Shown: piece after piece, positions 1,008 through 61,388 of the stretch
Position numbering within the stretch: position 1 is the stretch's first letter
Layout of the letters: every line of letters starts with the position of its first letter
Virus record (IMG/VR): IMGVR_UViG_3300017917_003143
Coordinates: 62,001 to 126,000 of that record
Strand: one strand, 5' to 3'
DNA: 64,000 bases
The notes under the pieces: generated by a model
Database searches by the model: none
Seen by the model: the letters and a program-made list of their open reading frames with translations, nothing else
Told to the model about the DNA's origin: nothing
Translations under genes and position numbers: made by a program

Positions 1008-1503
1008 GATACCTTATGTGCCTAAATGGAATCTGTGGTGCAAAATATCCCCAGTGATCACAGTGGGTGATGATGTCCTTGATGCTGATCGATTGGGAGA
1101 GTTTGGATCAGACCTACACGGATTTGAAGAGTTCAAGATATCAATACTGTATGACAACCAGGTTCTGTATTCAGGAACGTTTGATCAACACCAGCCCATA
1201 GTTGTTGATGTAGATTTATTAGACGATAAAGAAAATACAGATCATGTACTGTGCATCGGACTTGAGGGCAAGACTGACGATCACAGTTGTTTTCATCAGG
1301 GCAAAAGCGTTTCATTGGCCGCGAAAATCAACCTAAGCATAGAACAGATGCCCTTGGATCTCCATGTCATGGCAACAGGTATAAAAACCATCGCAGGCGA
1401 AAACGGCGTACAGAATTTTTCTATTAGCACACCTATCTATCGTTGGCTACTGAAAAATCATGAGCATATAACGGCTGATTTATATTCGATATATAAAGAA
1501 TGA
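979..1503 (+). CDS. Hypothetical protein
   Basis: ORF overlapping neighbours in an operon-like arrangement; ATG at 979 preferred over 928. Confidence 0.5.
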   Translation: MWHSLTPKGKIPYVPKWNLWCKISPVITVGDDVLDADRLGEFGSDLHGFEEFKISILYDNQVLYSGTFDQHQPIVVDVDLLDDKENTDHVLCIGLEGKTDDHSCFHQGKSVSLAAKINLSIEQMPLDLHVMATGIKTIAGENGVQNFSISTPIYRWLLKNHEHITADLYSIYKE

Positions 1504-2210
1504 CCCTATTTTTATACATCCTGGTGATGACACATATCACCATAGCCTGTGTTACCCTTTATTTGCATCGTAGCCAAGCTCATCGTGGCGTCACGTTTGA
1601 CCCACGTGTGAGTCATTTCATGCGTTTTTGGCTGTGGTTGACCACAGGCATGGTTACCAAACAATGGGTAGCCACACATCGCAAACATCATAGATTCACC
1701 GACGCAGAAGGCGATCCGCACAGTCCTAGAAACGAAGGCATCTGGCAAATCTTGCTGGGCGGTGCCTTTTACTATGCCTGGGCCGCAAAAGATCGGGCCA
1801 TGGTCGAACAATACGGAGCAGGAACACCCGATGATTGGATGGAACGCAACATATACACTCCATTCAATTGGTTGGGTGTGACACTAATGTTCTTTATCAA
1901 CTGCATGATCTGGGGATGGGCTTGGGGGTGGTTGCCTTGGCTATGGCAGATGATCTGGATTCCGCTATGGGCCGCAGGAGTCATAAACGGGCTTGGACAC
2001 TGGTGGGGCTACCGCAACACACAGACCCGAGACTATTCAACCAATATAGTACCTTGGGCGTTTTTTATCGGCGGCGAAGAACTGCACAACAATCACCATG
2101 CTGATCCTGCCAGTCCCAAACTCAGCCAAAAGCGTTGGGAATGGGATCTGGGTTGGACCTATATCCGTATTTTAGAACGCTGTAAATTGGCTACATTACG
2201 GACAAACTAA
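1500..2210 (+). CDS. Delta-9 acyl-CoA/acyl-lipid fatty acid desaturase
   Basis: Three His boxes HRSQAH, HRKHH, HNNHH plus hydrophobic TM segments. Confidence 0.9.
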   Translation: MTLFLYILVMTHITIACVTLYLHRSQAHRGVTFDPRVSHFMRFWLWLTTGMVTKQWVATHRKHHRFTDAEGDPHSPRNEGIWQILLGGAFYYAWAAKDRAMVEQYGAGTPDDWMERNIYTPFNWLGVTLMFFINCMIWGWAWGWLPWLWQMIWIPLWAAGVINGLGHWWGYRNTQTRDYSTNIVPWAFFIGGEELHNNHHADPASPKLSQKRWEWDLGWTYIRILERCKLATLRTN

Positions 2211-4713: not shown

Positions 4714-5295
4714 ATGACTGCGATGATCCAAGAAAAAGACGATCTTACATACTCTCCTGGTGACGATCTTAAAAAGAGTGGCATCTACACATTTATGGGT
4801 GATGTAGACAGTGACAGTATGTTGCCCATCATCGAATGGATCCTACATGAAAACTACATAGTCAAGAAAAAGAAAAAAGAACTCATCCTGATGATTTGCA
4901 GTCGCGGCGGGGATATGGAAGAAGCCTTTGCCTTGATTGACGTGATGAAGAGCAGTAATATACCCATCAAGACTGTGGGCTTGGGGCAGATTGCCAGCTG
5001 TGGATTGTTGATATTCCTAGCAGGTACTCTCGGTCGTAGAGTTCTTACACCCAACACATCTATTTTAAGTCATCAATATTCATGGGGCAGTGATGGCAAG
5101 CATCACGAGCTCTTTGCTATAACCAAAGAGTTTGGTCTAGCCCAACAAAGAATGTTGGATCACTATTGCGAGACCACTGGGCTTGATGAAGAAACAGTCA
5201 AAGCAAAACTATTGCCGGCCAATGATGTATGGCTCAGTGCGCTAGAAGCCAAAGAACTAGGCATCTGCGATCATATCGCACACATCGTGCGTTAA
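4714..5295 (+). CDS. Divergent ClpP-like protease
   Basis: ICSRGG, QIASCG (Ser), LSHQ (His) and NDVWLS (Asp) match the ClpP layout. Confidence 0.8.
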   Translation: MTAMIQEKDDLTYSPGDDLKKSGIYTFMGDVDSDSMLPIIEWILHENYIVKKKKKELILMICSRGGDMEEAFALIDVMKSSNIPIKTVGLGQIASCGLLIFLAGTLGRRVLTPNTSILSHQYSWGSDGKHHELFAITKEFGLAQQRMLDHYCETTGLDEETVKAKLLPANDVWLSALEAKELGICDHIAHIVR

Positions 5296-6916: not shown

Positions 6917-7513
6917 ATGCCCAATTTAGTGCCCATTGTGCTGGAACAAACCAGCCGCGGAGAACGCAGTTACGACATTTATAGCCGATTACTGAAAGAT
7001 CGCATCGTCATGCTAGACACAGATGTAAACAGCCATAGTGCTAGTTTGATAGTGGCGCAGATGCTGTTCTTAGAAGCTGAAGATCCAGACAAAGACATCT
7101 TGTTTTACATCAATTCGCCCGGCGGGTCGGTTACCGCAGGAATGAGCATTTACGACACAATGAATTACATCAAATGTGATGTCACTACCATCGTTATGGG
7201 GCAAGCCGCGAGCATGGGTTCTTGTCTAGCTCAGGCTGGCGCACCCGGTAAGCGTTACATCTTGCCCAACGCACGACACATGATCCACCAGCCCTTGGGC
7301 GGAGCAGAAGGTCAAGCCACAGACATTGAGATCCATGCTCGTGAGATCTTGCGCTGGAAAGATGTGTTGACCAACATTTATGTCAAGCATAATTCAGCAG
7401 GCAAAACTTTTGAAGATTTGCGCAATGATATGGAACGAGATAATTTCATGACCGCAGAACAAAGTGTCGCATACGGATTAGCAGACAAGGTTATCAACAA
7501 GAGAGATGCCTAA
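6917..7513 (+). CDS. clpP: ATP-dependent Clp protease proteolytic subunit
   Basis: [48 protein letters not shown]. Confidence 0.97.
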
Positions 7514-8816
7514 ACAAGAAGTTTTCTGCAACAGTCCGTGGTATGAACTGCATGTATACTGGGATGGGTCTTTAGCATTTTGTTGCCATGCCACTCCCAG
7601 AGTTCCTTATGATTCCAAAGAGAAATCAACGTATAACATAAAGAACATGACCATTCGAGAATGGTATGATTCTGAACCTATGCGAAAATCACGAATGTGG
7701 ATGCTGGGTGACCAACGTTGGAATCACTGTGATCGTTGTTGGCATGAGGAATCTGTTTCAGACACCAGTCGCCGTCATCGTAGTAATCAGAAATCAGTTA
7801 TCTTTCGACAAAACTTTAATGAAAGTCTACAGCAGAGTCCAGGGTGGTCAAAATTTAAGCACAGCCTAGATAATCAAGGGGCCTATAGTGGATTGCCTAT
7901 AGACTTACACATTGATCTTGGAAACTATTGCAACTTGGCCTGCAAGATGTGCAATCCTTATGCTTCCAGTCGCATCGCTAGCCAGCACAAACAATGGGGC
8001 ATATTGGATCGTAGTACACAAGATTGGACTCAAGACCAAACTGTATGGAACAGATTCCTCCAGGAACTATTAGATACTCCTCAGTTAAAAAATATACACT
8101 TCATGGGTGGAGAGACTCTGATACAACCAAGATTTCGAGAGCTCATTGAATTTCTACATTTACATGATCGCACGGATCTATGCGTGAGTTTTGTCACCAA
8201 TGGTACTGTGTATGATCAAGACCTTGTTGGTAAATTAAAATCTTTTGAGCGGGTAGGGATAGAAGTCAGTATCGAAGCATTAGATGAGGTCAATGCTTAT
8301 GTCCGTCAAGGAACAGACACTGATCTAGTGATCAAGAATATAGAAAAATATCTTGCAGAGTGCAATGGATCCTCGATCACTGTGACTCTGCGTCCTGCTC
8401 CAGGATTATTGACTGTAAAAAGCTATTGGCAAGTCATTGAGTATGCGTTACAAAATTCTCTGTTGATCAAAAGCAACCTGTGTACTGATCCTGCATTTTT
8501 ACACATCAATGTTCTGCCAGAAGAATTAAAACTCAAATACAAACAGTTTTATGTAGATCTCGTGCAACGATGGAATTTAAGAGATCAAAATCTTGATCCA
8601 GATTCCAATGAAAGCGACCCTAATAACTATCTATCAGTGGCAGTAAATCAGATATTGCAAATTATAAATCTATTAGAATCGCCGCCTCCCGCTGATCAAG
8701 AAGATTTGCTTAGGCAGTTAGTTGATCATCTGCAAAGATGGGATCCTGTCTACGGCCTTGATGCCAGACTGGTCTACCCAGAATTGATTCCTACGTTAGA
8801 TAGATATGGATACTAG
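7506..8816 (+). CDS. Radical SAM protein with N-terminal SPASM/twitch-like Cys cluster
   Basis: CNLACKMC (CxxxCxxC), FMGGET, N-terminal CC...CxxC. Confidence 0.9.
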
Positions 8817-14919: not shown

Positions 14920-15271
14920 CATTTTATTGTATATTGCTCTGGGCATCTGCATTGGTGTCTGGTTGTTTTACTTCACGCTCAAATTGATCATACGCAGGCT
15001 CTTAGCAAGGATCGAAAATGATCTTGAAGAGGCCTTGGAAAAACACCAGGAAGAAAAGACGATCCCTTGCCGGGTGGAATTGCACAATGCGATGTTTTTC
15101 GTGTATAATAACGAAACCAACGAATTCATGGCACAGGGCAAGGATCTAAAAGAATTGCGTGAGCATATCAAATTTCGGTGGGCCGACAAAAAAGTCAGCG
15201 TGGTCGCTGGCGAAGAAAATGTATTAGACCAACTAAGGGCACAACTAAATGAAAGTAGCAGTAGCCAGTGA
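14906..15271 (+). CDS. Membrane-anchored hypothetical protein
   Basis: N-terminal TM helix. Confidence 0.55.
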   Translation: METTDILLYIALGICIGVWLFYFTLKLIIRRLLARIENDLEEALEKHQEEKTIPCRVELHNAMFFVYNNETNEFMAQGKDLKELREHIKFRWADKKVSVVAGEENVLDQLRAQLNESSSSQ

Positions 15272-16118
15272 CATACACTTGGAGTTTGGAGATCTTGATC
15301 TACCCAATACCGACAGTGCTGATGTCTTGATCCTAAGTGGAGATATCTGTGTGGCCCGTGATATCGGTCGCCCGGATCCCAACAACATCATAGAAGGCGC
15401 CCGTAGCCAACGAGTACGAGACTTCTTCCAGCGTGTGAGTTCTGCGTTCCCGCATGTGGTTTTTGTCATGGGCAATCATGAACATTATCATGGTGACTTT
15501 GCCAAGAGCTACAGCACGATCAAGAACATGCTGGCCGATCATCATCTCCATAATGTGTATCTCTTGGAAAAAGAAACCAAGGAGATTGACGGGTGGATGT
15601 TTATCGGTGGCACACTATGGACCGACTTCAATGGTGGTGATTTACAGACCATGCAACATGCGTCTTGGGGCATGAACGACTACAACGGCATCAAGAACAG
15701 CGACTCTGGTCACGCTCACGGTATCTGGAAATTGATCCCTGAAGCCACACTGAAAGATCACTACAAGATGAAAAGTTATATCCAAACAGTGTTGGCCAAT
15801 CGACGAGCACAAGGTCTGCGTGATCGCCGTGTGGTAGTGGTAGGACATCATGCGCCTAGCAGAGCCAGCACACATCCCAGATATCAACACGATATCCTGA
15901 TGAATGGTTGCTATAGCAGTGCTTTGGACAACATCATGTTGGACAATCCGGAAATCGTGTTATGGACACATGGCCACACTCACGAAGATTTTGACTACAT
16001 GATTGGATCCACTCGTGTGGTCTGTAACCCACGTGGCTATATTGGCTACGAAGACAAGGCAGATCGATGGCAGGCAAAATACATAGATTTGGACAGTATC
16101 TCCGCTATAGCGGAGTAA
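15249..16118 (+). CDS. Calcineurin-like metallophosphoesterase
   Basis: SDIH, SGD, GNHEH, HH, HGHTH motifs. Confidence 0.92.
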   Translation: MKVAVASDIHLEFGDLDLPNTDSADVLILSGDICVARDIGRPDPNNIIEGARSQRVRDFFQRVSSAFPHVVFVMGNHEHYHGDFAKSYSTIKNMLADHHLHNVYLLEKETKEIDGWMFIGGTLWTDFNGGDLQTMQHASWGMNDYNGIKNSDSGHAHGIWKLIPEATLKDHYKMKSYIQTVLANRRAQGLRDRRVVVVGHHAPSRASTHPRYQHDILMNGCYSSALDNIMLDNPEIVLWTHGHTHEDFDYMIGSTRVVCNPRGYIGYEDKADRWQAKYIDLDSISAIAE

Positions 16119-18693: not shown

Positions 18694-19140
18694 ATGAAAC
18701 TGTACTTTGCCTACGGCGCAAATCTCAGCAGAGACAGCATGTCACACCGTTGTCCTCAAGCCAGACCCTTCCAGAGTTTCTATTTGCGGGGATGGGAACT
18801 GGGTTTTGCTACCCATGCCACTATCCGACCCAATCCAGGAAAAGTCGTTCCCGGGGCCTTGTGGCGCATCACTGACGACTGCGAGTGGAACCTTGACTCA
18901 TTCGAAGGCTATCCCAAATACTACGGTAAACGCATACTTGAACAAGACGGTTATGAGTTCATGGTCTATGTCATGAACAATCCTCAATATGGGACCACTT
19001 ACGAATCCTATGTTGACCTAATACATGCCGGGTATCAGGATTGGAACCTTGATTCGGCTCCTCTTTGGGACGCGGTTGACCAGATACAACTTCCTGTGTA
19101 TAATGATAAAGAATGGCAATACTCCACAGCAATCTCCTAG
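18694..19140 (+). CDS. Gamma-glutamylcyclotransferase (GGCT/AIG2-like)
   Basis: LYFAYGANL start, LDSFEGYP. Confidence 0.85.
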   Translation: MKLYFAYGANLSRDSMSHRCPQARPFQSFYLRGWELGFATHATIRPNPGKVVPGALWRITDDCEWNLDSFEGYPKYYGKRILEQDGYEFMVYVMNNPQYGTTYESYVDLIHAGYQDWNLDSAPLWDAVDQIQLPVYNDKEWQYSTAIS

Positions 19141-19376
19141 ACGAAGCTTTTAAAAAGCAGATAAACTGGAGAGACAAAGACAGTTTTGCTTATGCCTTGG
19201 AGATTCGCAAACCATTTGGTGCGTTGGACGAAGTACTGAAATGGTGCAAAGGCGAACTGCAAAATGATTGGCGGTGGCAGATGGTGGAGATGGCCAACGA
19301 TAGGAATCCTGGAAGGTACATTTTTTACTTTGATTCTGAACAGGATTATTTTGCGTGTTTTTTGAAATGGAGTTAA
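19113..19376 (+). CDS. Hypothetical protein
   Basis: Preceded by TTGACC(19076)-N17-TATAAT(19099). Confidence 0.55.
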   Translation: MAILHSNLLDEAFKKQINWRDKDSFAYALEIRKPFGALDEVLKWCKGELQNDWRWQMVEMANDRNPGRYIFYFDSEQDYFACFLKWS

Positions 19377-19645: not shown

Positions 19646-19777
19646 AGTATCTACAGTACATCTTAGTGGCCACTATCACCCTCAACATATTCTTGTTCTG
19701 GGGAACTGATGCAGTGTATGGTTGGGTGGTAGCATTGGCAGGTTGGGTACCACACTTATTTGACAGGAAAGCGAATC

Positions 19778-20812
19778 ATGGCAACTAAAAAAGAAAAACA
19801 AGACCTCATCAACACATTGAAGTTTACACCACGTACCTATCGTGTTGAGTTGGGTGCTTATGGCGGAGAAGTTTATTGCGGTCGTGTGGATCGTAAAATT
19901 TATGACTACTTCAAAAGTCGTAGCATCGACTTGGATGAGTTCGCATCTGACTGGGACAACGAATTAGAAGTTCCTGACGACATGCAACCATTTCCACCAG
20001 GTAGTCCCTATGAATGCGATGGCTTGCTACATGCCAGTGGTGCTACCATGGACAGTGGTAACTATATCACTGTGTACGATGAAAATGGCGAAGAAGTTTG
20101 GCAACACAGTTTAGATCTTGATGCTCTTGATGACAGTGAAATCCCTGTCAACGAATGGGAAGTATTCACGCTGGATGAGCTTAAAGAAGGTGAAGTAGCT
20201 TACTGGGGAGCCCAAGGCGAGAAAGGTCTGTGCTACGGTGGCGAGTTTGAACTCAAAGAACCTTTTGATCCCAAGAAGTTTTGTCTAAACTTTAGTAATG
20301 CCGATGGCTGGTATATCTGCAATGGCGTGAGCTACGACGGCGAAGATATCGACAACAACGATTTAAGTACCACAGGCAAGTGGGGCGAGAATAAGTGGCT
20401 TATCGGCGGTGACGAAGAACCATATGATCCAGCAGATGCTGTGCCCGAGGGCGAGGAAAATGGCGGTGCCGGATGGCCTGCTAGTTACTACCCTGATGAA
20501 AGCGAAGAAGTAGAGTTCAAGTTCAAAAAACACAAGCCCGTGCATGTGGGTTGGTACACTGTGAACTGGGGATACGGCAGTACCTATGGCAAACTGTACT
20601 GGAACGGCACAGAGTTTGTGGACTTTGAGTACAACAAAGAACAGAGCATTGACCAAGAAGGTGTCGTGACCTGGAAGGGTCTCAACTGGGACACATCAGA
20701 TTGGGCCAACTGCCCACAGCCCAAAGAAGTAGAGGAAGACTGGGATCCAGCGGCCGAGCTGGAAAAGATCTCTGTGCCTGAATCAGACACTAAAAAATCC
20801 TGGCCCTTTTAA
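19778..20812 (+). CDS. Acidic hypothetical protein
   Basis: SD agga; very Asp/Glu-rich. Confidence 0.6.
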   Translation: MATKKEKQDLINTLKFTPRTYRVELGAYGGEVYCGRVDRKIYDYFKSRSIDLDEFASDWDNELEVPDDMQPFPPGSPYECDGLLHASGATMDSGNYITVYDENGEEVWQHSLDLDALDDSEIPVNEWEVFTLDELKEGEVAYWGAQGEKGLCYGGEFELKEPFDPKKFCLNFSNADGWYICNGVSYDGEDIDNNDLSTTGKWGENKWLIGGDEEPYDPADAVPEGEENGGAGWPASYYPDESEEVEFKFKKHKPVHVGWYTVNWGYGSTYGKLYWNGTEFVDFEYNKEQSIDQEGVVTWKGLNWDTSDWANCPQPKEVEEDWDPAAELEKISVPESDTKKSWPF

Positions 20813-20866
20813 GTTAGTACCCACTAACTTAGTGGGGTTGACAGAAAATCTTTTTTCTGTTATACT
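20811..20866 (+). promoter_or_regulatory. Palindrome + early promoter cassette, copy 2
   Basis: AAGTTAGT-accc-ACTAACTT then TTGACA-N17-TATACT. Confidence 0.85.
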
Positions 20867-20961
20867 GTAGGAACTTGATAAAATTCTAACTCGAGCATGG
20901 TGCTCATAGAGAGTTTTATCGGTAGATGCATGGTGCATCGTTACAACCCAAGGAGAATCAA

Positions 20962-22005
20962 ATGGCAAAACGCCTCACACGTAAACTCACGGATGTTGCT
21001 CGTGAAGTTGAATCCACACTCAAAACCCACTACGGGGTAACTCAAAAAGAACTCAATGCTTGGCGGCAGGCCGCACAGAGTTCCCCGCATTCGTTTCCTG
21101 CGAGCCACATGGTCACGATCGACGATCTATACATCGACTATGAGGTCCAGCGTGATGTCATCCATGATCACGTCAAAAACATCATGAAGAAATGGGATCC
21201 ACGTATTTGTAGTCCTGTTTCTGCTTGCCAGTTGGTTGGCAAATCTACTATTGATACCTATGATGGACAGCACCGTACCATCGCCGCTACCATTCTTGGG
21301 TACACAGAACTTCCCGGTGCAGTGGTAACGACCACAGATCCTCAATTTGCCAGCCTGGCATTTGAAATGCTCAATGATACTGGTGTCCGTCATTTGACAC
21401 CTGGTGATAAACATCGCAACGCATTGGTTCGCTACAAACTTGGCAGTCGTGATATCAAGAACGTTCGTGCCCGTACCATGCAAGATCAATTTGATGCACT
21501 AGAAATTGACTTGCAAGACAAAGGCTCTCGCAACAGTCCTACTCTGCGTGGTGACCATGACTACTTCTTTAGTCATTTTAAGTATGCACAAAAAGGCATC
21601 GACCTTGATCCCAAAGGACAGGTATTGTTTGACATCCTCAAAGCCATCAAAGAAACGTTTCCCATTCAAGAAGAAATTGATCAAGGTGTGTTTATTGGAC
21701 TGTATGAGTTACAACGCCTAGCAGGTGAATACAATGTCAAGCTACCGCAGGGCTGGATGAAAACATTGTTGGAAAGCATCAAACCTATTTTCAAAGGATC
21801 CAAGCTCATCCACGACAAAGCCAAGACACAGTGGGAACACAAGAATCCGGGTGCCACCTGGAGTGCGCCCAGTGCTATGAGCAATTTCATGCGTGAGTTG
21901 CATATCTTGTCTGGTGGCAGTCTACAGTTACCAACTCACGGTCCTGGTGCCAGCATGGGCATCACTGCTGGAAATGTAGTACCTGGCCTGTTTCCGGAGG
22001 CTTGA
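20962..22005 (+). CDS. DGQHR-domain (ParB/Srx superfamily; DndB/DUF262-like) protein
   Basis: YEVQRDV ... TYDGQHRT; SD aaggag. Confidence 0.8.
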   Translation: MAKRLTRKLTDVAREVESTLKTHYGVTQKELNAWRQAAQSSPHSFPASHMVTIDDLYIDYEVQRDVIHDHVKNIMKKWDPRICSPVSACQLVGKSTIDTYDGQHRTIAATILGYTELPGAVVTTTDPQFASLAFEMLNDTGVRHLTPGDKHRNALVRYKLGSRDIKNVRARTMQDQFDALEIDLQDKGSRNSPTLRGDHDYFFSHFKYAQKGIDLDPKGQVLFDILKAIKETFPIQEEIDQGVFIGLYELQRLAGEYNVKLPQGWMKTLLESIKPIFKGSKLIHDKAKTQWEHKNPGATWSAPSAMSNFMRELHILSGGSLQLPTHGPGASMGITAGNVVPGLFPEA

Positions 22006-22006
22006 T

Positions 22007-22564
22007 ATGTTGAAAGAAAGTTTAGAAAAATTCACACCTCCGGTGTATGGTCGGACCAAGCGAAACGCCAACACCTACAAGACAGTGGCAAATCGTTGCA
22101 CTCGCAATCTTAAACGATTGGTGGAGGAATACAATACCACACACAATGACGCTCAGGAGTTGCGTGAAATACGCAACGAAATTGATGACTTCTTGCGCCG
22201 GTATCATGAATACTGCATCAAGCAACGAGACAACATGGATGCTCACTATCACGAGCAAGGTTCAGAAGAAGACACTGACTTTGAACATTTGATTCCGGCC
22301 GCTCGTATCCGTGATCTATTGTTGGCTGGAGTGATCACGGTTGAGCAGGCACTGAATGCACCTACGGTGAAGCTGAGTCGTAGCAAACACATGGCACTCA
22401 AAGACGCCGGGTGGGCCAGCCACACACCTGACATGTGGTTGCCATTCCGTAGATATAGCCAAGTGTTTGATGCTGACTTTACCACGTTTGATGGTACTGT
22501 GATAGATCCTGAAACGTGGACTCTGGAACGGCATTTTGACTATTTTAAGCATCTTGTGCTGTAA
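22007..22564 (+). CDS. Putative HNH/His-Me finger nuclease (GmrD/DUF1524-like)
   Basis: DFEHLIP ... LNAPTVKLSRSKH. Confidence 0.6.
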   Translation: MLKESLEKFTPPVYGRTKRNANTYKTVANRCTRNLKRLVEEYNTTHNDAQELREIRNEIDDFLRRYHEYCIKQRDNMDAHYHEQGSEEDTDFEHLIPAARIRDLLLAGVITVEQALNAPTVKLSRSKHMALKDAGWASHTPDMWLPFRRYSQVFDADFTTFDGTVIDPETWTLERHFDYFKHLVL

Positions 22565-22627
22565 GTTAGTGGATACTAACCTAGTAAAATACTAGGGGTT
22601 GACCAGAAAACCCATTTTGGTTATAAT
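22564..22627 (+). promoter_or_regulatory. Palindrome + early promoter cassette, copy 3
   Basis: AGTTAGT-ggat-ACTAACC, a second dyad CCTAGT-aaaat-ACTAGG, then TTGACC-N17-TATAAT. Confidence 0.85.
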
Positions 22628-24135: not shown

Positions 24136-24567
24136 ATGCCTTGCAGACACTACGAAAGCGATGATTGGGGAGTCAGTAGCTCTGCTCCTAAAATCAAAGC
24201 AGAACTAGATAAGATGGCTCGCATCGCGTGTGCGGCCATGGAAGAACTCGTTGAACAAGGTCGAGCAGATTTTCTAGTTATTAAAAACGAAGAAGTTCGA
24301 GAATGGTGGGAAGCCCATGTGGCCGCTGATCGAGCAGAAAAAGCTCGTGTCGCTGAACAAGAACGCCGAGAGCGAATCAAAGCCGATGCACTTGCACGTC
24401 TAAGCGACGAAGAAAAAGAATTGCTCGGGTTGGCCAAACCCAAGGCCAAGAAGCATTCTAAAAAAATCGGCACTCCAGTTCCTGTAACGGTGGTGGTTAA
24501 CGAAGAAGTAGATGCTCTGGAAGAGTTATTCCACGAAGCAATTAAGTTTGGAAAACATCGTGAGTGA
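24136..24567 (+). CDS. Hypothetical coiled-coil protein
   Basis: SD aagga; MPCRHY start. Confidence 0.55.
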   Translation: MPCRHYESDDWGVSSSAPKIKAELDKMARIACAAMEELVEQGRADFLVIKNEEVREWWEAHVAADRAEKARVAEQERRERIKADALARLSDEEKELLGLAKPKAKKHSKKIGTPVPVTVVVNEEVDALEELFHEAIKFGKHRE

Positions 24568-24895
24568 TCATCAGTTTGTTGCTGTGTGGGATTGCTATGG
24601 GCTGGAGTATATTGGCGATGTTACCATGGCCGAGCAAGACCGTACCTGGGCGGCACTCCAAGGCAAGGCGCCCACATTGACTATTCCAAATCTCTTGCAT
24701 CTTGAGCTAAGAGCACGTTATAATAGTCAACGGCATTATGAGATATATATTTTTAATGCCCAGGAAGGCATCACTGCCGATGACATCCGAGAGATGTTCG
24801 AAGCAGATCCGCAGGTGGCCGCTGACACTATCCGGCGTATCGGACACAAGTTCTACAGCGACCGTAGAGAGGAACATTCGATAAAAATCAGATAA
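24560..24895 (+). CDS. Hypothetical protein
   Basis: GTG start overlapping the previous gene. Confidence 0.55.
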   Translation: MSDHQFVAVWDCYGLEYIGDVTMAEQDRTWAALQGKAPTLTIPNLLHLELRARYNSQRHYEIYIFNAQEGITADDIREMFEADPQVAADTIRRIGHKFYSDRREEHSIKIR

Positions 24896-58684: not shown

Positions 58685-59134
58685 ATGAAACTCACCAACA
58701 AAGTGCTATACCGGCCAGCCAAACCGTTTACAGAGTTTGATCGCCCCACACAAAACCTATTCCTGGCTGACCAAATGTTTTCGTTTATGAGAAAGAACGA
58801 TGGTATTGGCCTGGCCGCACCACAGGTAGGAATGAGTAAAAGACTGTTTGTCATGGAGATCGCCGCGGTAAAAAGGATCTGTTTCAATCCTGAAGTCATT
58901 GGACACAGCGACGATTTAACCGAATACCCCGAAGGATGCTTGAGTTTTCCTGGAGAAGAGTGTAAAATAAAGAGACCCAGTGCCGTGACTGTGCGTTATC
59001 AAACCGTCGACGGTACATGGGTAGAAGAAAAACTTGATGGTCTGGCAGCTCGTTGTTTCCAACACGAATTAGATCATCTAGATGGAATAATCATGCACGA
59101 TAGAGCAAAGGAACAGAATGCAACAAAATCCTGA
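58685..59134 (+). CDS. def: Peptide deformylase
   Basis: GIGLAAPQVG, EGCLS, QHELDHLDG. Confidence 0.95.
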   Translation: MKLTNKVLYRPAKPFTEFDRPTQNLFLADQMFSFMRKNDGIGLAAPQVGMSKRLFVMEIAAVKRICFNPEVIGHSDDLTEYPEGCLSFPGEECKIKRPSAVTVRYQTVDGTWVEEKLDGLAARCFQHELDHLDGIIMHDRAKEQNATKS

Positions 59135-61388
59135 AATTGAACAGATCCTGGCGCAGGCGCAGAAATTAGCTCGTGCCAAACGACACGAATATGTCACGCT
59201 GGAGCATCTTGCATTGGCCCTGGTACGCCACGCACCTTTTAATACTGTGCTGAAAAAATTTGGCATCATGACCGATGCCCTGGACAATGATTTTGAGATG
59301 TACATCGATAGCCAGATACATCTCAAGTTAGAAGAAGATGCCGATCCCAAGAAAACCAATGCTCTCGAGCGTGTGTTTAATCGTGCCTTGACACAGGTGC
59401 TGTTCACGGGGCGCAGGCAAGTGACCACTATCGATCTGTGGTTGGCCATCATGAACGAAAGCAACAGCCATGCTCATTACTATTTCCTGAAGTATGGCTT
59501 GGACAAGAAAACATTCATTGATTTCTGGCAACAAAACTACTCTACCAAGGGTGGGGTGATCACCGACGAGCAAGCAGACGAGATCCTGGAAGAACACTGT
59601 GTCAACCTCAGCCAGAAGGCCAAAGAAAACAAGCTGGAGCCCTTGATTGGACGAAGCACAGAGCTCAACGAAATCATCACTGTGCTGGCCAAGAAGTTTA
59701 AATCCAACGTGCTCATGGTAGGCGACCCTGGCGTGGGTAAAACTGCCATCGCTGAAGGCCTGGCCACCATGATCCAGCAGGGTAATGTGCCTGAGTTCTT
59801 GAAAGACCACGAAGTATGGTCGTTGGAGATTGGCAGTTTGTTGGCAGGAAGCAAGTATCGCGGAGAGTTTGAAGAAAAGCTCAAAGAAGTGATCATGGCC
59901 CTGGAACAAAAGAAAAACGTTGTGCTGTTTATTGACGAAGCACACACCATGCGTGGTGCCGGAAGTTCCAGCAGTTCCACCCTGGACTTTGCCAACATGA
60001 TCAAACCTGCTATCACCAAAGGTATACTCAAAGTCATTGCATCGACTACATGGGAAGAGTACTACGAGAGCTTTGAAAAGGATCGTGCGCTGATGCGTCG
60101 TTTCTATAGAGTAAGCATCGATGAGCCAGATGCCGCAACCACTGTGCGCATCCTGACAGGACTGCAACCTCGCTTGGAAGAGTTCCACAATGTCACTATT
60201 GATTCCAAGGCCATTGATCGTGCAGTTGAGCTGGCTACTCGCTATCTACATGACAAAAAGAATCCTGACAAATCCATTGATTTAGTTGACGCGGCCTGTG
60301 CCCGTGAACGTGTAAAGGACCTTGGCAAGATCTCGATCACAGCAGAAATGATACAAGACCAAGTGGGTCGAGTAGCCAACATTCCAGCAGATCGTGTCAA
60401 GAACGATGTCAACGCTAAAATCGTAGAGTTGGATTCAAACATCAAACAACGACTGTATGGACAGGACCAAGTGGTCGACAGTGTGCTGGAACGTATCTAT
60501 GTCAACTACGCAGGTATTGGCAGCCAGAAACGTCCGGTAGGCTGTTTCTTGTTCCTGGGCCCAACAGGTACAGGTAAGACAGAGCTGGCCAAGTTACTGG
60601 CAGAGAATCTCGACATGCACATGCTACGCTATGACATGAGCGAGTATCAGGATCGCCACACAGTGAGTTCGTTGTTGGGTGCGCCTCCGGGATTCGTGGG
60701 CTATGATGACAGCCAACTGGGCGGCGGCAAGCTGATCAATGACTTGAGCAAGCATCCATTCTCAGTGATGCTGTTTGACGAAATTGAAAAAGCACATCCT
60801 GATGTGGCCAACATCTTCCTGCAGATGATGGACGAAGGTACCATCACAGGTAGCAATGGCAAAAAGGTTGATGTCAAGAACTGTATCATCATCATGACAT
60901 CTAACTTGGGCGCACGAGACAACGAAAACAACAACATCGGTTTTGGCCAGAGCTTGGAAAAGTCAGGTGAGGAAGACCGTGCCATGAAAGAATATTTCAA
61001 GCCCGAACTACGAAATCGTCTAGACTTGATTTGCAAGTTCAACAAGCTGGATACCCTGTCAATCAAGAAAGTAGTGGTCAAGTTTGTAGACGAACTCAAG
61101 CGCAGTCTAGCAGATCGCCAGATCACCCTGGTGCTCACAGAATCCATGATCGATCATTTGGTCAGTGTGGGTTATGATCCCAAGATGGGTGCCCGTCCAT
61201 TGGGCCGCAAGATCGACGAACTGATCAAAGTTCCGCTGAGTAAGAAGATCTTGTTTGAACGCTTGAAAGATTGTGCAGTCACAGTTGACTGGAACAATGA
61301 CGCTGTGGTGTTTTCACACTCCACAGACAATGCCACACCAGTGGTAGACAAAGATGGAATCATAGTCCTTGAACAACCGAAATCTTGA
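59118..61388 (+). CDS. clpA: ATP-dependent Clp protease ATPase subunit
   Basis: Clp N domain, two Walker A motifs (GDPGVGKT, GPTGTGKT), IGF loop (NIGFG). Confidence 0.93.
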   Translation: MQQNPEIEQILAQAQKLARAKRHEYVTLEHLALALVRHAPFNTVLKKFGIMTDALDNDFEMYIDSQIHLKLEEDADPKKTNALERVFNRALTQVLFTGRRQVTTIDLWLAIMNESNSHAHYYFLKYGLDKKTFIDFWQQNYSTKGGVITDEQADEILEEHCVNLSQKAKENKLEPLIGRSTELNEIITVLAKKFKSNVLMVGDPGVGKTAIAEGLATMIQQGNVPEFLKDHEVWSLEIGSLLAGSKYRGEFEEKLKEVIMALEQKKNVVLFIDEAHTMRGAGSSSSSTLDFANMIKPAITKGILKVIASTTWEEYYESFEKDRALMRRFYRVSIDEPDAATTVRILTGLQPRLEEFHNVTIDSKAIDRAVELATRYLHDKKNPDKSIDLVDAACARERVKDLGKISITAEMIQDQVGRVANIPADRVKNDVNAKIVELDSNIKQRLYGQDQVVDSVLERIYVNYAGIGSQKRPVGCFLFLGPTGTGKTELAKLLAENLDMHMLRYDMSEYQDRHTVSSLLGAPPGFVGYDDSQLGGGKLINDLSKHPFSVMLFDEIEKAHPDVANIFLQMMDEGTITGSNGKKVDVKNCIIIMTSNLGARDNENNNIGFGQSLEKSGEEDRAMKEYFKPELRNRLDLICKFNKLDTLSIKKVVVKFVDELKRSLADRQITLVLTESMIDHLVSVGYDPKMGARPLGRKIDELIKVPLSKKILFERLKDCAVTVDWNNDAVVFSHSTDNATPVVDKDGIIVLEQPKS

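What the first reader, a model, noticed from the sequence alone, without database searches (positions are those of the whole stretch)
20962..22564. Phage-encoded DGQHR (ParB/Srx-like NTPase) + HNH two-gene module resembling a split GmrSD/SspE/DndB-type system
Seen: gene 1 has QR...DGQHR; gene 2 starts 1 nt after its stop and carries FEHLIP...N...H. The pair is a self-contained unit with its own promoter cassette upstream and another cassette directly downstream. Established: DUF262 (DGQQR) plus DUF1524 (EHIxP HNH) is the architecture of the modification-dependent nucleases GmrSD and SspE, and DndB is a DGQHR regulator. Inference: an early-expressed, NTP-gated nuclease used against modified DNA of competing phages or the host chromosome, or a decoy against host defence. 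The mid and C-terminal parts do not look like canonical GmrS, so it may be a new family.
Basis: partly seen in the sequence, partly recalled or inferred. Interest (0 to 1): 0.8.

Follow-up and report, generated by a model that had tools for sequence, protein, structure and literature searches.

The report
Phage ParB-like plus putative nuclease pair
Two adjacent early genes of an uncultured 344-kb freshwater phage encode a ParB/sulfiredoxin-type nucleotide-binding protein and a small partner with nuclease-like motifs; the pair stays together across several phage lineages, resembles a split GmrSD-type DNA-cutting enzyme only at the level of motifs and fold, and has no assigned function anywhere.

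Summary
Gene 1 (20962-22005, 347 aa) and gene 2 (22007-22564, 185 aa) lie 1 nt apart, each behind a Shine-Dalgarno site. A near-consensus sigma-70 promoter precedes the pair and another follows it.

Gene 1 models as a ParB/Srx fold. It carries all three DGQHR-domain motifs (QR, DGQHR, FxxxN), invariant among 39 homologs.

Gene 2 carries E93-H94-x-x-P97, conserved in 64 relatives down to 22% identity. Its model has the same helix/strand order published for the GmrD nuclease core.

No test places either protein in DUF262, DUF1524, DndB, HNH or any defence family. That includes Pfam, NCBIfam, PADLOC, PHROGs, PDB sequence and fold searches, and a BrxU-family profile.

The pair is a conserved island in a variable early region: 80 of 83 related loci keep both genes. 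It recurs in a marine lineage and in a third lineage whose partner has DGQHT instead of DGQHR. In 60 of 80 loci a nuclease-like ORF has inserted between the two genes.

Best reading: a two-subunit, nucleotide-gated DNA nuclease or nickase that is core to these phages. Its target is unknown.

The parts
20813..20837 (+). Hairpin/palindrome element GTTAGT-ACCC-ACTAAC, overlapping the palindrome CCCACTAA-C-TTAGTGGG, directly upstream of the -35 box. Probably the terminator or processing site of the preceding unit, or an operator.
   Evidence: Pattern found 5 times in the window against 0 expected; direct-repeat family D7; sequence read.
20838..20866 (+). Sigma-70-type promoter of the pair (TTGACA-17-TATACT with TG extension).
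   Evidence: 11 of 12 consensus positions; member of the early promoter array.
20950..20955 (+). Shine-Dalgarno AAGGAG of gene 1.
   Evidence: Sequence; 6-nt spacing to ATG 20962.
20962..22005 (+). Gene 1, 347 aa. ParB/Srx-fold protein with a DGQHR-type motif set, followed by a helical domain and a conserved Gly/Pro-rich C-terminal tail.
   Evidence: ORF. 1058 homolog clusters, all named 'hypothetical'. AF2 model with pLDDT 84. All top Foldseek PDB hits are ParB/Noc/KorB/Srx/PadC/SerK, probability up to 0.99. PHROG 1033 ParB-like at 8e-5. Atlas neighbours carry ParB/Srx, DUF6551, ParB_N or GmrSD_N.
21148..21153 (+). Q63-R64 ('QR pair' of DGQHR domains).
   Evidence: Invariant in 39 homologs; also invariant in lineage C; motif definition from PMC4619093.
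21262..21276 (+). D101-G-Q-H-R105, the counterpart of the Srx/ParB phosphate-binding signature.
   Evidence: D, Q, H and R invariant, with G/A at position 102. Falls in register with DGQQR of BrxU in hhalign, though the alignment is not significant.
21361..21375 (+). F134-x-x-x-N138 (FxxxN motif of DGQHR domains).
   Evidence: F134 and N138 invariant; motif definition from PMC4619093.
21996..22000 (+). Shine-Dalgarno GGAGG of gene 2, inside the 3' end of gene 1 (translational coupling).
   Evidence: Sequence.
22007..22564 (+). Gene 2, 185 aa. [quoted passage not shown] Putative divergent His-Me (GmrD-like) nuclease subunit.
   Evidence: ORF. 989 close clusters. 122 representatives at the 50% clustering level. 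Alignments A1 and A3. AF2 model with pLDDT 71.5. Atlas leads.
22283..22297 (+). E93-H94-L-I-P97, the candidate catalytic Glu-His of a His-Me finger (compare (E/D)H(I/L/V)xPQ of GmrD and DHIYP of BrxU).
   Evidence: H94 invariant, E93 and P97 conserved in at least 90% of 64 diverse relatives. Lies on a beta strand (residues 92-95) in the model. Motifs from PMC4619093 and PMC8565348.
22355..22390 (+). N117...H128 segment (ALNAPTVKLSRSKH): a beta strand then the start of a helix. Candidate structural Asn and metal ligand.
   Evidence: N117 is common but variable. Position 128 is H, D, N, E or S, and L131 is nearly invariant. Strand 120-123 and helix 125-133 in the model.
22565..22596 (+). Two hairpins directly after the gene 2 stop: GTTAGT-GGAT-ACTAAC, then CCTAGTA-AAA-TACTAGG. 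They mark the end of the transcription unit.
22599..22627 (+). Promoter of the next early unit (TTGACC-17-TATAAT).
   Evidence: 11 of 12 consensus positions.

Best explanation
Genes 1 and 2 most likely encode the two subunits of one early-expressed, DNA-directed enzyme.

Shown: they are transcribed from one host-type (sigma-70) promoter. Their arrangement fits translational coupling. They are inherited together across divergent phage lineages.

Shown by model and motifs: gene 1 is a ParB/sulfiredoxin-fold protein of the DGQHR type.

Inferred: gene 1 binds a nucleoside triphosphate and DNA, and acts as the sensing and switching subunit.

Inferred, moderate confidence: gene 2 is a small, highly divergent His-Me-finger (GmrD/DUF1524-like) nuclease. 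E93-H94 would be the catalytic pair and position 128 (H/D/N/E/S) the candidate metal ligand. A long helical hairpin could dock onto gene 1 or mediate dimerisation.

Together they would work like a genuinely split GmrSD/BrxU/SspE-type enzyme, in which nucleotide binding by the ParB-like subunit gates cutting or nicking of DNA by the partner.

The pair is a strongly conserved core pair in a lytic-looking large phage, not a sporadic island gene. The target is therefore more likely DNA that the phage must process in every infection: the host chromosome, or non-self DNA told apart from phage DNA by modification status. The target and the discrimination rule are not shown.
For: - Anatomy: 1-nt spacing, a Shine-Dalgarno site for each gene, one promoter upstream, and hairpins plus the next promoter downstream.
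- Gene 1 fold: AF2 pLDDT 84; the leading Foldseek PDB hits, nearly all of the 50 listed, are ParB, Noc, KorB, Srx, PadC or SerK (E 0.009-0.3, probability 0.8-0.99).
- Gene 1 motifs: QR, DGQHR and FxxxN, the three motifs that define DGQHR domains and recur in GmrS (PMC4619093), are invariant in 39 homologs.
- Related proteins bind nucleotides: phage ParB-fold/DUF6551 proteins, the nearest named relatives by Atlas, bound ATP or CTP in vitro (preprint 10.1101/2025.10.10.680097).
- Gene 2 motifs: E93, H94 and P97 are conserved down to 22% identity, and position 128 is H, D, N, E or S.
- Gene 2 neighbours: the nearest Pfam-bearing Atlas clusters are HNH-type nucleases (GH-E, HNH, HNH_4, ICEA, GmrSD_C) plus one BstXI restriction-endonuclease cluster. 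A family member's model aligns to an HNH protein with TM 0.58, normalised to the HNH protein.
- Linkage within the lineage: both genes present, same order and strand, in 80 of 83 loci. Flanking genes are found in 0-28 of 79 loci, the pair in 74-79 loci at about 70% identity. Distance matrices of the two genes correlate (r 0.41, above all 500 permutations).
- Linkage in other lineages: a marine lineage (gene 1 51% identical, gene 2 33%) has the pair overlapping by 4 nt. A 349-kb lineage has it adjacent. Lineage C has a barely alignable ParB-like partner directly upstream of a 39%-identical gene 2.
Against: - No statistically significant link of gene 2 to any nuclease family:
  - Pfam on 64 members: no HNH or GmrSD_C hit.
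  - PADLOC, PHROGs and NCBIfam: none.
  - PDB sequence profiles: none.
  - Foldseek against PDB and BFVD: E > 3.
  - hhalign to classical HNH genes and to a BrxU-family profile: E 0.05-0.9, probability about 1% or less.
- The gene 2 model is only moderate (pLDDT 71.5, below 60 after residue 135).
- N117 and H128 are not invariant. The invariant residues Y81, R149, Y150 and H176 are not part of the GmrD motif set, so the active site could be of another kind.
- Gene 1 also misses every HMM at E <= 1.
- In lineage C the signature Arg is Thr in 119 of 120 proteins, which questions a universal NTPase role.
- The Atlas scores are in the range the tool calls 'lead only'.
- No evidence was obtained on DNA modification of this phage, on nuclease activity or on expression. 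The laid reads were uninformative.
Confidence: 0.4

Rival explanations
1. A nucleotide-switched DNA-binding regulator or organiser with a small partner, and no nuclease. Gene 1 would act like DndB (an ATP-responsive repressor), or like KorB or Noc (ParB-fold clamps that bind palindromic sites near promoters). Gene 2 would be a KorA-like co-factor. Together they would shut off or organise the phage's early promoter array or its DNA.
For: Structural hits include KorB (8qa9, probability 0.96), Noc and ParB, with 200-300 aligned columns that reach into the helical domain. DndB is a DGQHR protein that acts as a repressor. The window holds at least 12 near-identical early promoters, five of them preceded by a palindromic element that could be an operator. 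Nothing significant ties gene 2 to nucleases.
Against: TM-scores to ParB, KorB and Noc are low (0.17-0.33), so only the N-domain is clearly shared. No HTH family was detected in gene 1. Invariant His, Glu, Tyr and Arg residues in gene 2 across 22%-identity relatives look catalytic or metal-binding rather than those of an adaptor. The marine and lineage-C relatives keep the pair, but it was not checked whether they keep the palindromes.
Confidence: 0.2
2. An accessory of a phage DNA-modification pathway. The ParB-like subunit would load on or track DNA, and gene 2 would be an enzyme or adaptor that helps install or process a base or backbone modification. This would be analogous to ParB-like domains attached to phage DNA methyltransferases.
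For: ParB-like genes are reported as enriched next to phage DNA glycosyltransferase/5mYOX pathways (preprint 10.1101/2023.12.21.572611), and ParB-fold fusions to methyltransferases are frequent in phages. In the marine relative the pair is followed directly by a GT1 glycosyltransferase, an NAD epimerase and GTP cyclohydrolase I. In lineage C a TylF-like methyltransferase always sits just upstream. Core-gene behaviour fits an obligatory modification step.
Against: The neighbouring modification-type genes differ between lineages and are absent next to the pair in this window: the flanks have no Pfam family, and no TylF homolog is found in the window. No modification enzyme fold was detected in either protein. 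No DNA-modification enzyme (transglycosylase, hydroxymethylase or DNA methyltransferase) turned up among the 18 larger window ORFs scanned against Pfam.
Confidence: 0.15
3. One reading: an accessory weapon against modified DNA of competing phages (type IV-like exclusion), or a decoy that soaks up a host defence factor.
For: Known DUF262+DUF1524 enzymes (GmrSD, BrxU) are modification-dependent. Early expression would suit exclusion of superinfecting phages.
Against: Accessory weapons are usually patchy and fast-evolving. This pair is present in about 96% of related loci, at about 70% identity, inside an otherwise fluid region. A decoy would not need invariant catalytic-looking residues over 22%-identity distances. 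No PADLOC model matches.
Confidence: 0.1
4. Gene 2 is an enzyme or metal-binding protein of an unrelated, undescribed fold. The EHxxP resemblance to GmrD is convergent or chance, and the pair does something not covered above, for example nucleotide or RNA metabolism.
For: The strictly invariant set (Y81, H94, R149, Y150, H176) does not map onto the E/D-H-N-N set of GmrD. No fold match exists in PDB or BFVD. The family has no PHROG, Pfam or NCBIfam entry.
Against: [quoted passage not shown]
Confidence: 0.15

Closest known systems
GmrSD / BrxU / SspE (DUF262 ParB/Srx NTPase + DUF1524 His-Me nuclease; type IV restriction and phosphorothioate-sensing effectors)
   Same: The order is the same: a ParB/Srx-fold part with QR, DGQ(Q/H)R and FxxxN first, then a part with (E/D)HxxP on a strand, a helical insertion, a second strand and a helix. 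The secondary-structure pattern is also the same.
   Different: - Two separate proteins rather than one chain; the classic 'split' case was actually fused.
- No significant sequence, profile or fold similarity.
- The second and third GmrD motifs are only loosely matched: 11-residue instead of 9-residue spacing, and the residues are not invariant.
- Gene 2 is shorter (185 aa) and has an N-terminal helical hairpin.
- Encoded by lytic-looking large phages as a core early pair, not in bacterial defence islands.
DndB / DGQHR-domain proteins (TIGR03187, PF14072)
   Same: ParB/Srx fold and the QR + DGQHR + FxxxN motif set. DndB-like proteins bind ATP or GTP.
   Different: No HMM match. No dnd genes nearby. 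Paired with a conserved 185-aa partner that DndB lacks. In lineage C the Arg is replaced by Thr.
Phage ParB-CTPase-fold proteins with DUF6551 (PF20188)
   Same: The nearest named neighbours by protein-language-model features and predicted structure (TM 0.56-0.74 between models of family members). They are of viral origin and of similar length, and members bind ATP or CTP in vitro.
   Different: The window protein does not reach the DUF6551 or ParB_N HMMs at E <= 1. The function of DUF6551 proteins is itself unknown. No partner like gene 2 has been described for them.
ParB / Noc / KorB CTP-dependent DNA clamps
   Same: Best solved-structure matches for the N-terminal domain.
   Different: Low TM-scores (0.17-0.33). 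The signature is DGQHR rather than GERRxR. No ParA-type ATPase lies next to the pair here or in the related loci whose neighbours were listed. No detected HTH or C-terminal dimerisation domain.

Membership tests
GmrSD family (DUF262 + DUF1524) | N-terminal part matches DUF262/GmrSD_N (PF03235) or PADLOC GmrSD/BrxU/SspE models | tested here: not met
   No Pfam, NCBIfam or PADLOC hit for gene 1 at E <= 1. hhalign of A2 against BrxU and against a 6-member BrxU-family profile gave E 0.05-0.3, probability about 1% or less.
GmrSD family (DUF262 + DUF1524) | ParB/Srx fold of the NTPase part | tested here: met
   AF2 model with pLDDT 84. The leading Foldseek PDB hits, nearly all of those listed, are ParB/Srx superfamily members, probability up to 0.99.
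GmrSD family (DUF262 + DUF1524) | QR pair, DGQ(Q/H)R and FxxxN motifs (PMC4619093) | tested here: met
   Q63, R64, D101, Q103, H104, R105, F134 and N138 are invariant in 39 homologs. In lineage C the motif is D(G/A)QHT.
GmrSD family (DUF262 + DUF1524) | Nuclease part matches DUF1524/GmrSD_C (PF07510) | tested here: not met
   No hit in the window protein or in any of 64 diverse relatives. hhalign to the BrxU-family C-terminal profile gave E 0.045-0.12, probability about 1%.
GmrSD family (DUF262 + DUF1524) | Motif (I/L/V)(E/D)H(I/L/V)xPQ | tested here: met
   F-E93-H94-L-I-P97-A. H94 is invariant, E93 and P97 conserved in at least 90% of 64 relatives. The trailing Q is absent.
GmrSD family (DUF262 + DUF1524) | Motifs L(G/A)NLxLLxxxN and NxxFxxKK | tested here: inconclusive
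   A-L-N117...H128-x-x-L131-K. The spacing is 11 rather than 9 residues. N117 is variable, position 128 is H, D, N, E or S, and L131 is nearly invariant.
GmrSD family (DUF262 + DUF1524) | His-Me (beta-beta-alpha-metal) fold of the nuclease core | tested here: inconclusive
   [quoted passage not shown] Foldseek against PDB and BFVD gave no match (E > 3). The Atlas structure match of a family member to HNH proteins has TM 0.37-0.58.
GmrSD family (DUF262 + DUF1524) | NTP-stimulated, modification-dependent DNA cleavage | not testable with these tools
   Needs biochemistry.
GmrSD family (DUF262 + DUF1524) | Location in bacterial defence islands or mobile elements | tested here: not met
   Encoded in the early region of 120-350-kb phage contigs. 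Only two MAG contigs were found among 185,579 genomes.
DGQHR domain / DndB (TIGR03187, PF14072) | HMM match to the DGQHR-domain or DndB models | tested here: not met
   No hit at E <= 1 in NCBIfam or Pfam.
DGQHR domain / DndB (TIGR03187, PF14072) | Nearly invariant DGQHR pentapeptide with QR and FxxxN | tested here: met
   G102 is Ala in a subset of homologs.
ParB N-terminal CTPase domain (PF02195) / DUF6551 (PF20188) | HMM match | tested here: not met
   No Pfam hit. Only PHROG 1033 'ParB-like partition protein' at 8e-5 over residues 50-152. Atlas neighbour clusters carry DUF6551 or ParB_N in 11-57% of members.
Classical HNH endonucleases (PF01844 and relatives) | HMM or profile similarity to HNH | tested here: not met
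   No Pfam hit in 64 members. hhalign to two HNH-type homing-endonuclease alignments gave E 0.4-0.9.

The most novel reading that the evidence does not exclude
The pair is a previously undescribed, phage-borne enzyme family: a genuinely two-subunit ParB/Srx sensor plus a minimal His-Me nuclease. It would be a core early function of several lineages of large aquatic phages. It would use the GmrSD/SspE logic in reverse: the ParB-like subunit reads the phage's own DNA mark (or its absence on host DNA), and nucleotide binding licenses the partner to destroy or nick unmarked host DNA. This would be a 'restriction system' working for the virus in every infection.
Probability: 0.15. Interest if true: 0.8.

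Novelty: new variant of a known kind. Interest (0 to 1): 0.55.

Why it matters
The two proteins are abundant: about 1000 clusters each at 90% identity, from lakes, ponds and the ocean. Every source labels them 'hypothetical'. No cultured phage in INPHARED has either one.

If the pair is a nucleotide-gated nuclease, it extends the ParB/Srx + His-Me architecture in two ways. That architecture is so far known from bacterial type IV restriction (GmrSD, BrxU) and phosphorothioate-sensing SspE. The pair would add a truly split form, and a phage-side role as a core function.

It would also give a compact two-protein system for studying how ParB-fold nucleotide switches control a nuclease. It is also a possible source of new DNA-modification-sensitive enzymes.

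If it is instead a regulator or a modification accessory, it still marks a conserved early step in a large, uncultured phage group.

Tried and rejected
- DNA and tblastn searches of both proteins, and of their marine and lineage-C counterparts, against 50,697 phage records: no match.
- Pfam, NCBIfam, PADLOC and PHROGs on the single proteins and on 64 gene 2 relatives: nothing beyond one weak ParB-like PHROG hit for gene 1.
- PDB sequence searches with the single proteins, the full gene 2 profile and a core-only profile: only chance hits.
- Foldseek of the gene 2 model against PDB and BFVD: nothing.
- Search for informative domain fusions among atypically long gene 2 relatives: none. One case was a chimeric contig carrying a prenyltransferase.
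- HUH-nuclease idea (H80-Y81-H82): rejected, because H80 and H82 are not conserved in the wide alignment.
- HEPN idea, raised by the top (insignificant) Foldseek hits: no Rx4-6H motif.
- Programmed frameshift fusing the two genes: unlikely, because most relatives carry a whole ORF between them.
- hhalign against classical HNH homing endonucleases, and against BrxU plus five plasmid homologs fetched for the purpose: motifs fall in register but the scores are not significant.
- Genome-collection scans with the wide alignments failed because no conserved stretch was available. The scan with close homologs found only two MAG contigs.
- Sequencing runs: the source is a pond metagenome and the relatives come from lakes. 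The one 'RNA' run is probably DNA and gave no transcript evidence.
- Short contigs for distant gene 2 relatives gave little context. One 28%-identity relative sits beside membrane and TonB genes with no ParB-like neighbour.
Full report
**Observation.** The region holds two + strand genes.
- Gene 1 starts at ATG 20962, preceded by AAGGAG at 20950-20955, and ends with TGA at 22003-22005 (347 aa).
- The mechanical ORF list offers a longer start at 20926. All homologs begin MAKRLTRK, which fixes 20962 as the start.
- Gene 2 starts at ATG 22007, 1 nt after that stop. GGAGG at 21996-22000 lies inside the end of gene 1. Gene 2 ends at 22564 (185 aa).

**Promoter setting.**
- A sigma-70-type promoter (TTGACA-17-TATACT, 11 of 12 consensus positions) sits at 20838-20866.
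- The next one (TTGACC-17-TATAAT) sits at 22599-22627, right after two hairpins that follow the gene 2 stop.
- These cassettes belong to an array of at least 12 near-identical + strand promoters between 10 and 31 kb.
- The hairpin GTTAGT-N4-ACTAAC occurs five times against none expected by chance.

**Where the window comes from.** Gene 2 is 100% identical to a stretch of IMGVR_UViG_3300017917_003143, a 343,632-bp viral contig. The sample is a pond metagenome. Relatives come from lakes and other fresh water, on contigs of 320-357 kb. The window also carries two ClpP genes, a ClpB/C-like ATPase, a fatty-acid desaturase, a radical-SAM/SPASM gene and tail-fibre-like genes. No cultured phage in INPHARED matches the region by DNA or by protein.

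**Gene 1.**
- Sequence models fail. There is no Pfam, NCBIfam or PADLOC hit at E <= 1, and only PHROG 1033 'ParB-like partition protein' at 8e-5.
- The AlphaFold2 model built on 39 homologs is good (pLDDT 84).
- Its leading Foldseek matches in the PDB are almost all ParB/sulfiredoxin-superfamily members: Noc, ParB, KorB, sulfiredoxin, PadC and serine kinase. E-values are modest (0.009-0.3), but the probabilities reach 0.99 and the hits are fully consistent with each other.
- The GmrSD phylogenomics paper defines DGQHR domains by three motifs: a QR pair, DGQHR and FxxxN (PMC4619093). In gene 1 these are Q63-R64, D101-x-Q-H-R105 and F134-x-x-x-N138. All are invariant in the alignment; only G102 varies, to Ala.
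- The nearest named neighbours in the ESM Atlas are viral clusters labelled ParB/Sulfiredoxin, DUF6551 or ParB_N, plus one GmrSD_N cluster.
- A 2025 preprint showed that phage ParB-fold/DUF6551 proteins bind ATP or CTP.
- Gene 1 is therefore a ParB/Srx-fold, DGQHR-type protein and probably nucleotide-binding. It lies outside every curated family model.

**Gene 2.**
- Nothing in Pfam, NCBIfam, PADLOC or PHROGs matches it, or any of 64 diverse relatives.
- The exhaustive search of 50%-identity representatives found 122 relatives, nearly all stand-alone proteins of about 185 aa.
- In an alignment reaching down to 22% identity, the invariant residues are Y81, H94, R149, Y150 and H176. R64, E93, P97, P119 and L131 are conserved in at least 90% of sequences.
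- N117 is common but variable. Position 128 is H, D, N, E or S.
- The AF2 model is moderate (pLDDT 71.5; high for the helical hairpin at residues 21-74, 56-88 for the core, poor after residue 135).
- The model's element order is helix 49-74, strand 92-95 (carrying E93-H94), helices 98-106 and 112-116, strand 120-123, and helix 125-133 (carrying H128 and L131).
[quoted passage not shown] There, D113-H114 sit on the first strand and a helical insertion separates the strands. An Asn precedes the second strand, and a metal-binding Asn followed by xxF sits on the helix.
- The first GmrD motif, (I/L/V)(E/D)H(I/L/V)xPQ, is matched by FEHLIPA; BrxU has DHIYP.
- Atlas neighbours that carry a Pfam family are almost all HNH-type (GH-E, HNH, HNH_4, ICEA, GmrSD_C), with one BstXI cluster, at scores of 0.69-0.77. 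The tool calls this range a lead only.

**Tests that failed for gene 2.**
- Foldseek of the model finds nothing in PDB or BFVD.
- Profile searches of PDB sequences with the whole family, or with the core alone, find nothing.
- BrxU and five plasmid homologs were fetched to build a real DUF262-DUF1524 profile. hhalign then places DGQHR on DGQQR and fEHvIP on vDHixP. The E-values are only 0.05-0.12 and the probability is about 1%.
- Membership of gene 2 in the His-Me superfamily is therefore plausible but not demonstrated.

**Linkage.**
- Among 83 related loci, 80 carry gene 1 upstream of gene 2 on the same strand.
- The window's other early genes are found in only 0-28 of 79 loci, at 27-73% identity. 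The pair is found in 74-79 loci at about 70% identity. It is a conserved island in a fluid region.
- Distance matrices of the two genes correlate (r 0.41, above all 500 permutations). This shows co-inheritance with some recombination between them, and does not by itself show a physical interaction.
- The pairing extends well beyond this lineage:
  - A marine 124-kb contig has gene 1 at 51% and gene 2 at 33% identity, overlapping by 4 nt.
  - A 349-kb contig has gene 2 at 41% identity, with gene 1 adjacent.
  - A third lineage ('C', 394-401 aa) has a ParB-like protein that aligns to gene 1 only over the ParB core (hhalign E 0.002). It lies directly upstream of a 39%-identical gene 2.
- In lineage C the motif is D(G/A)QHT in 119 of 120 proteins, so the signature Arg is not universal.
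- One very distant gene 2 relative (28% identity) has membrane and TonB neighbours and no ParB-like gene.

**Insertions at the junction.** Only 20 of 80 loci have the two genes abutting. The other 60 carry one extra ORF exactly at the junction, drawn from at least eight unrelated families.
- Two of these families are HNH-type (HNH_3/HNH, below the Pfam threshold).
- One is MvaI/BcnI-like (34.9 bits, above the threshold).
- One has a weak PacI-like match, and three look T5orf172/GIY-YIG-like by eye.
- This is the pattern of free-standing homing endonuclease genes settling between conserved genes. It argues that close spacing is not essential.
- A reading in which the inserted ORF is a swappable third component cannot be excluded. 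It is less economical, because the window and the marine lineage lack such an ORF.

**Context clues to function.**
- In the marine relative the pair lies between a gp44-like clamp loader and a GT1 glycosyltransferase, an NAD epimerase, GTP cyclohydrolase I, a purine permease and a GMP reductase.
- In lineage C a TylF-like methyltransferase is always just upstream.
- ParB-like genes have been reported as enriched near phage DNA glycosylation pathways.
- These neighbours differ between lineages and are absent beside the pair in this window. They hint at DNA modification in these phages, but they do not define the pair's role.

**Interpretation.**
- I commit, at about 0.4, to a two-subunit nucleotide-gated DNA nuclease or nickase. 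It would work like a truly split GmrSD/BrxU/SspE. It would be core to these phages, and so probably acts on host or other non-self DNA in every infection.
- Shown: the operon anatomy, the ParB/Srx fold and DGQHR motifs of gene 1, the conservation of EHxxP, and the evolutionary coupling of the two genes.
- Inferred: nucleotide binding, complex formation, the His-Me fold, nuclease activity and the target.
- The rivals are:
  - a DndB/KorB-like regulator with a small partner (0.2);
  - an accessory of DNA modification (0.15);
  - an unrelated enzyme whose resemblance to GmrD is fortuitous (0.15);

**Novelty.** Both proteins are 'hypothetical' in every source. They are absent from cultured phages and invisible to curated models. 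The architecture echoes a known kind, so I rate this a new variant of a known kind and of moderate interest. The interest would rise sharply if the nuclease activity, and a phage-side self/non-self logic, were demonstrated.

Noticed in passing
Relatives: L001:9053-9403, L005:3585-3998, L009:3451-4005, L020:3535-3996, L027:3459-4004, L033:3543-3998, L042:3382-4005, L044:3486-3998, L079:3427-4005 (junction equivalent to window 22005/22007): In 60 of 80 related loci one extra ORF sits exactly between gene 1 and gene 2, drawn from at least 8 unrelated families. Several are nuclease-like: HNH_3/HNH, MvaI/BcnI-like, weak PacI-like, and T5orf172/GIY-YIG-like by eye. This looks like a hotspot for free-standing homing endonuclease genes. 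The window has no such ORF.
   Followed up: partly
L093:3799-5004, L110:6001-7185, L111:6001-7185 (proteins P0381-P0500): A second widespread phage lineage pairs gene 2 homologs with a 394-401-aa ParB-like protein whose motif is D(G/A)QHT instead of DGQHR (119 of 120 proteins). A TylF-like methyltransferase always sits just upstream, and in two of the three loci looked at an 80-aa ORF lies between the pair.
   Followed up: partly
L089:1067-10576 (marine UViG, 124 kb): In the marine relative the pair is preceded by a gp44-like clamp loader. It is followed by a GT1 glycosyltransferase, an NAD-dependent epimerase, GTP cyclohydrolase I, a purine permease and a GMP reductase. This may be a DNA-modification or nucleotide-metabolism neighbourhood.
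   Followed up: partly
window 10003-30830 (+ strand): An array of at least 12 near-consensus sigma-70 promoters (GGTTGACCAGAAA...TATAAT), all on the + strand. Five are preceded by the hairpin GTTAGT-N4-ACTAAC (10246, 20813, 22565, 23102, 25252), and some have an overlapping palindrome next to the -35 box.
   Followed up: partly
window 1500-2210, 4714-5295, 6917-7513, 7506-8816, 15249-16118, 59118-61388: Host-like auxiliary genes: a fatty-acid desaturase, two ClpP proteases, a radical-SAM/SPASM protein, a metallophosphoesterase and a ClpB/C-type double AAA+ ATPase. Together with cyanophage-like fibre hits and the bloom, lake and pond sources, they hint at a cyanobacterial host. This was not tested.
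   Followed up: no
window 19113-19376 and 24512-24895: Two small ORFs (87 and 127 aa) recur within a few kb of the pair in 8 of 10 loci compared, including the divergent loci L092 and L093, but in shuffled order. They are further conserved early genes of unknown function.
   Followed up: no
window 21910-22002 (gene 1 residues 317-347): The C-terminal 30 residues of gene 1 are Gly/Pro-rich. P324, H326, G327, G329, G333, G342, L343 and P345 are invariant. The segment is modelled with high pLDDT but no secondary structure. It may be a docking tail for the partner.
   Followed up: no
window 19760-20812: The 350-aa acidic protein directly upstream of the pair has no Pfam family and no homolog in any of 79 related loci. 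It is a lineage-specific early gene.
   Followed up: no
L088 (NZ_JBBAKG010000036.1, 62.5 kb) and L087 (JABMMX010000395.1): The pair also occurs on contigs binned into a Haliscomenobacter sp. MAG and a deltaproteobacterial MAG. This is either mis-binned phage DNA or a weak host hint.
   Followed up: no
L086:553-1146: A 28%-identity relative of gene 2 lies between a multi-pass membrane protein and a TonB_C protein, with no ParB-like neighbour. The family may have stand-alone bacterial members.
   Followed up: no
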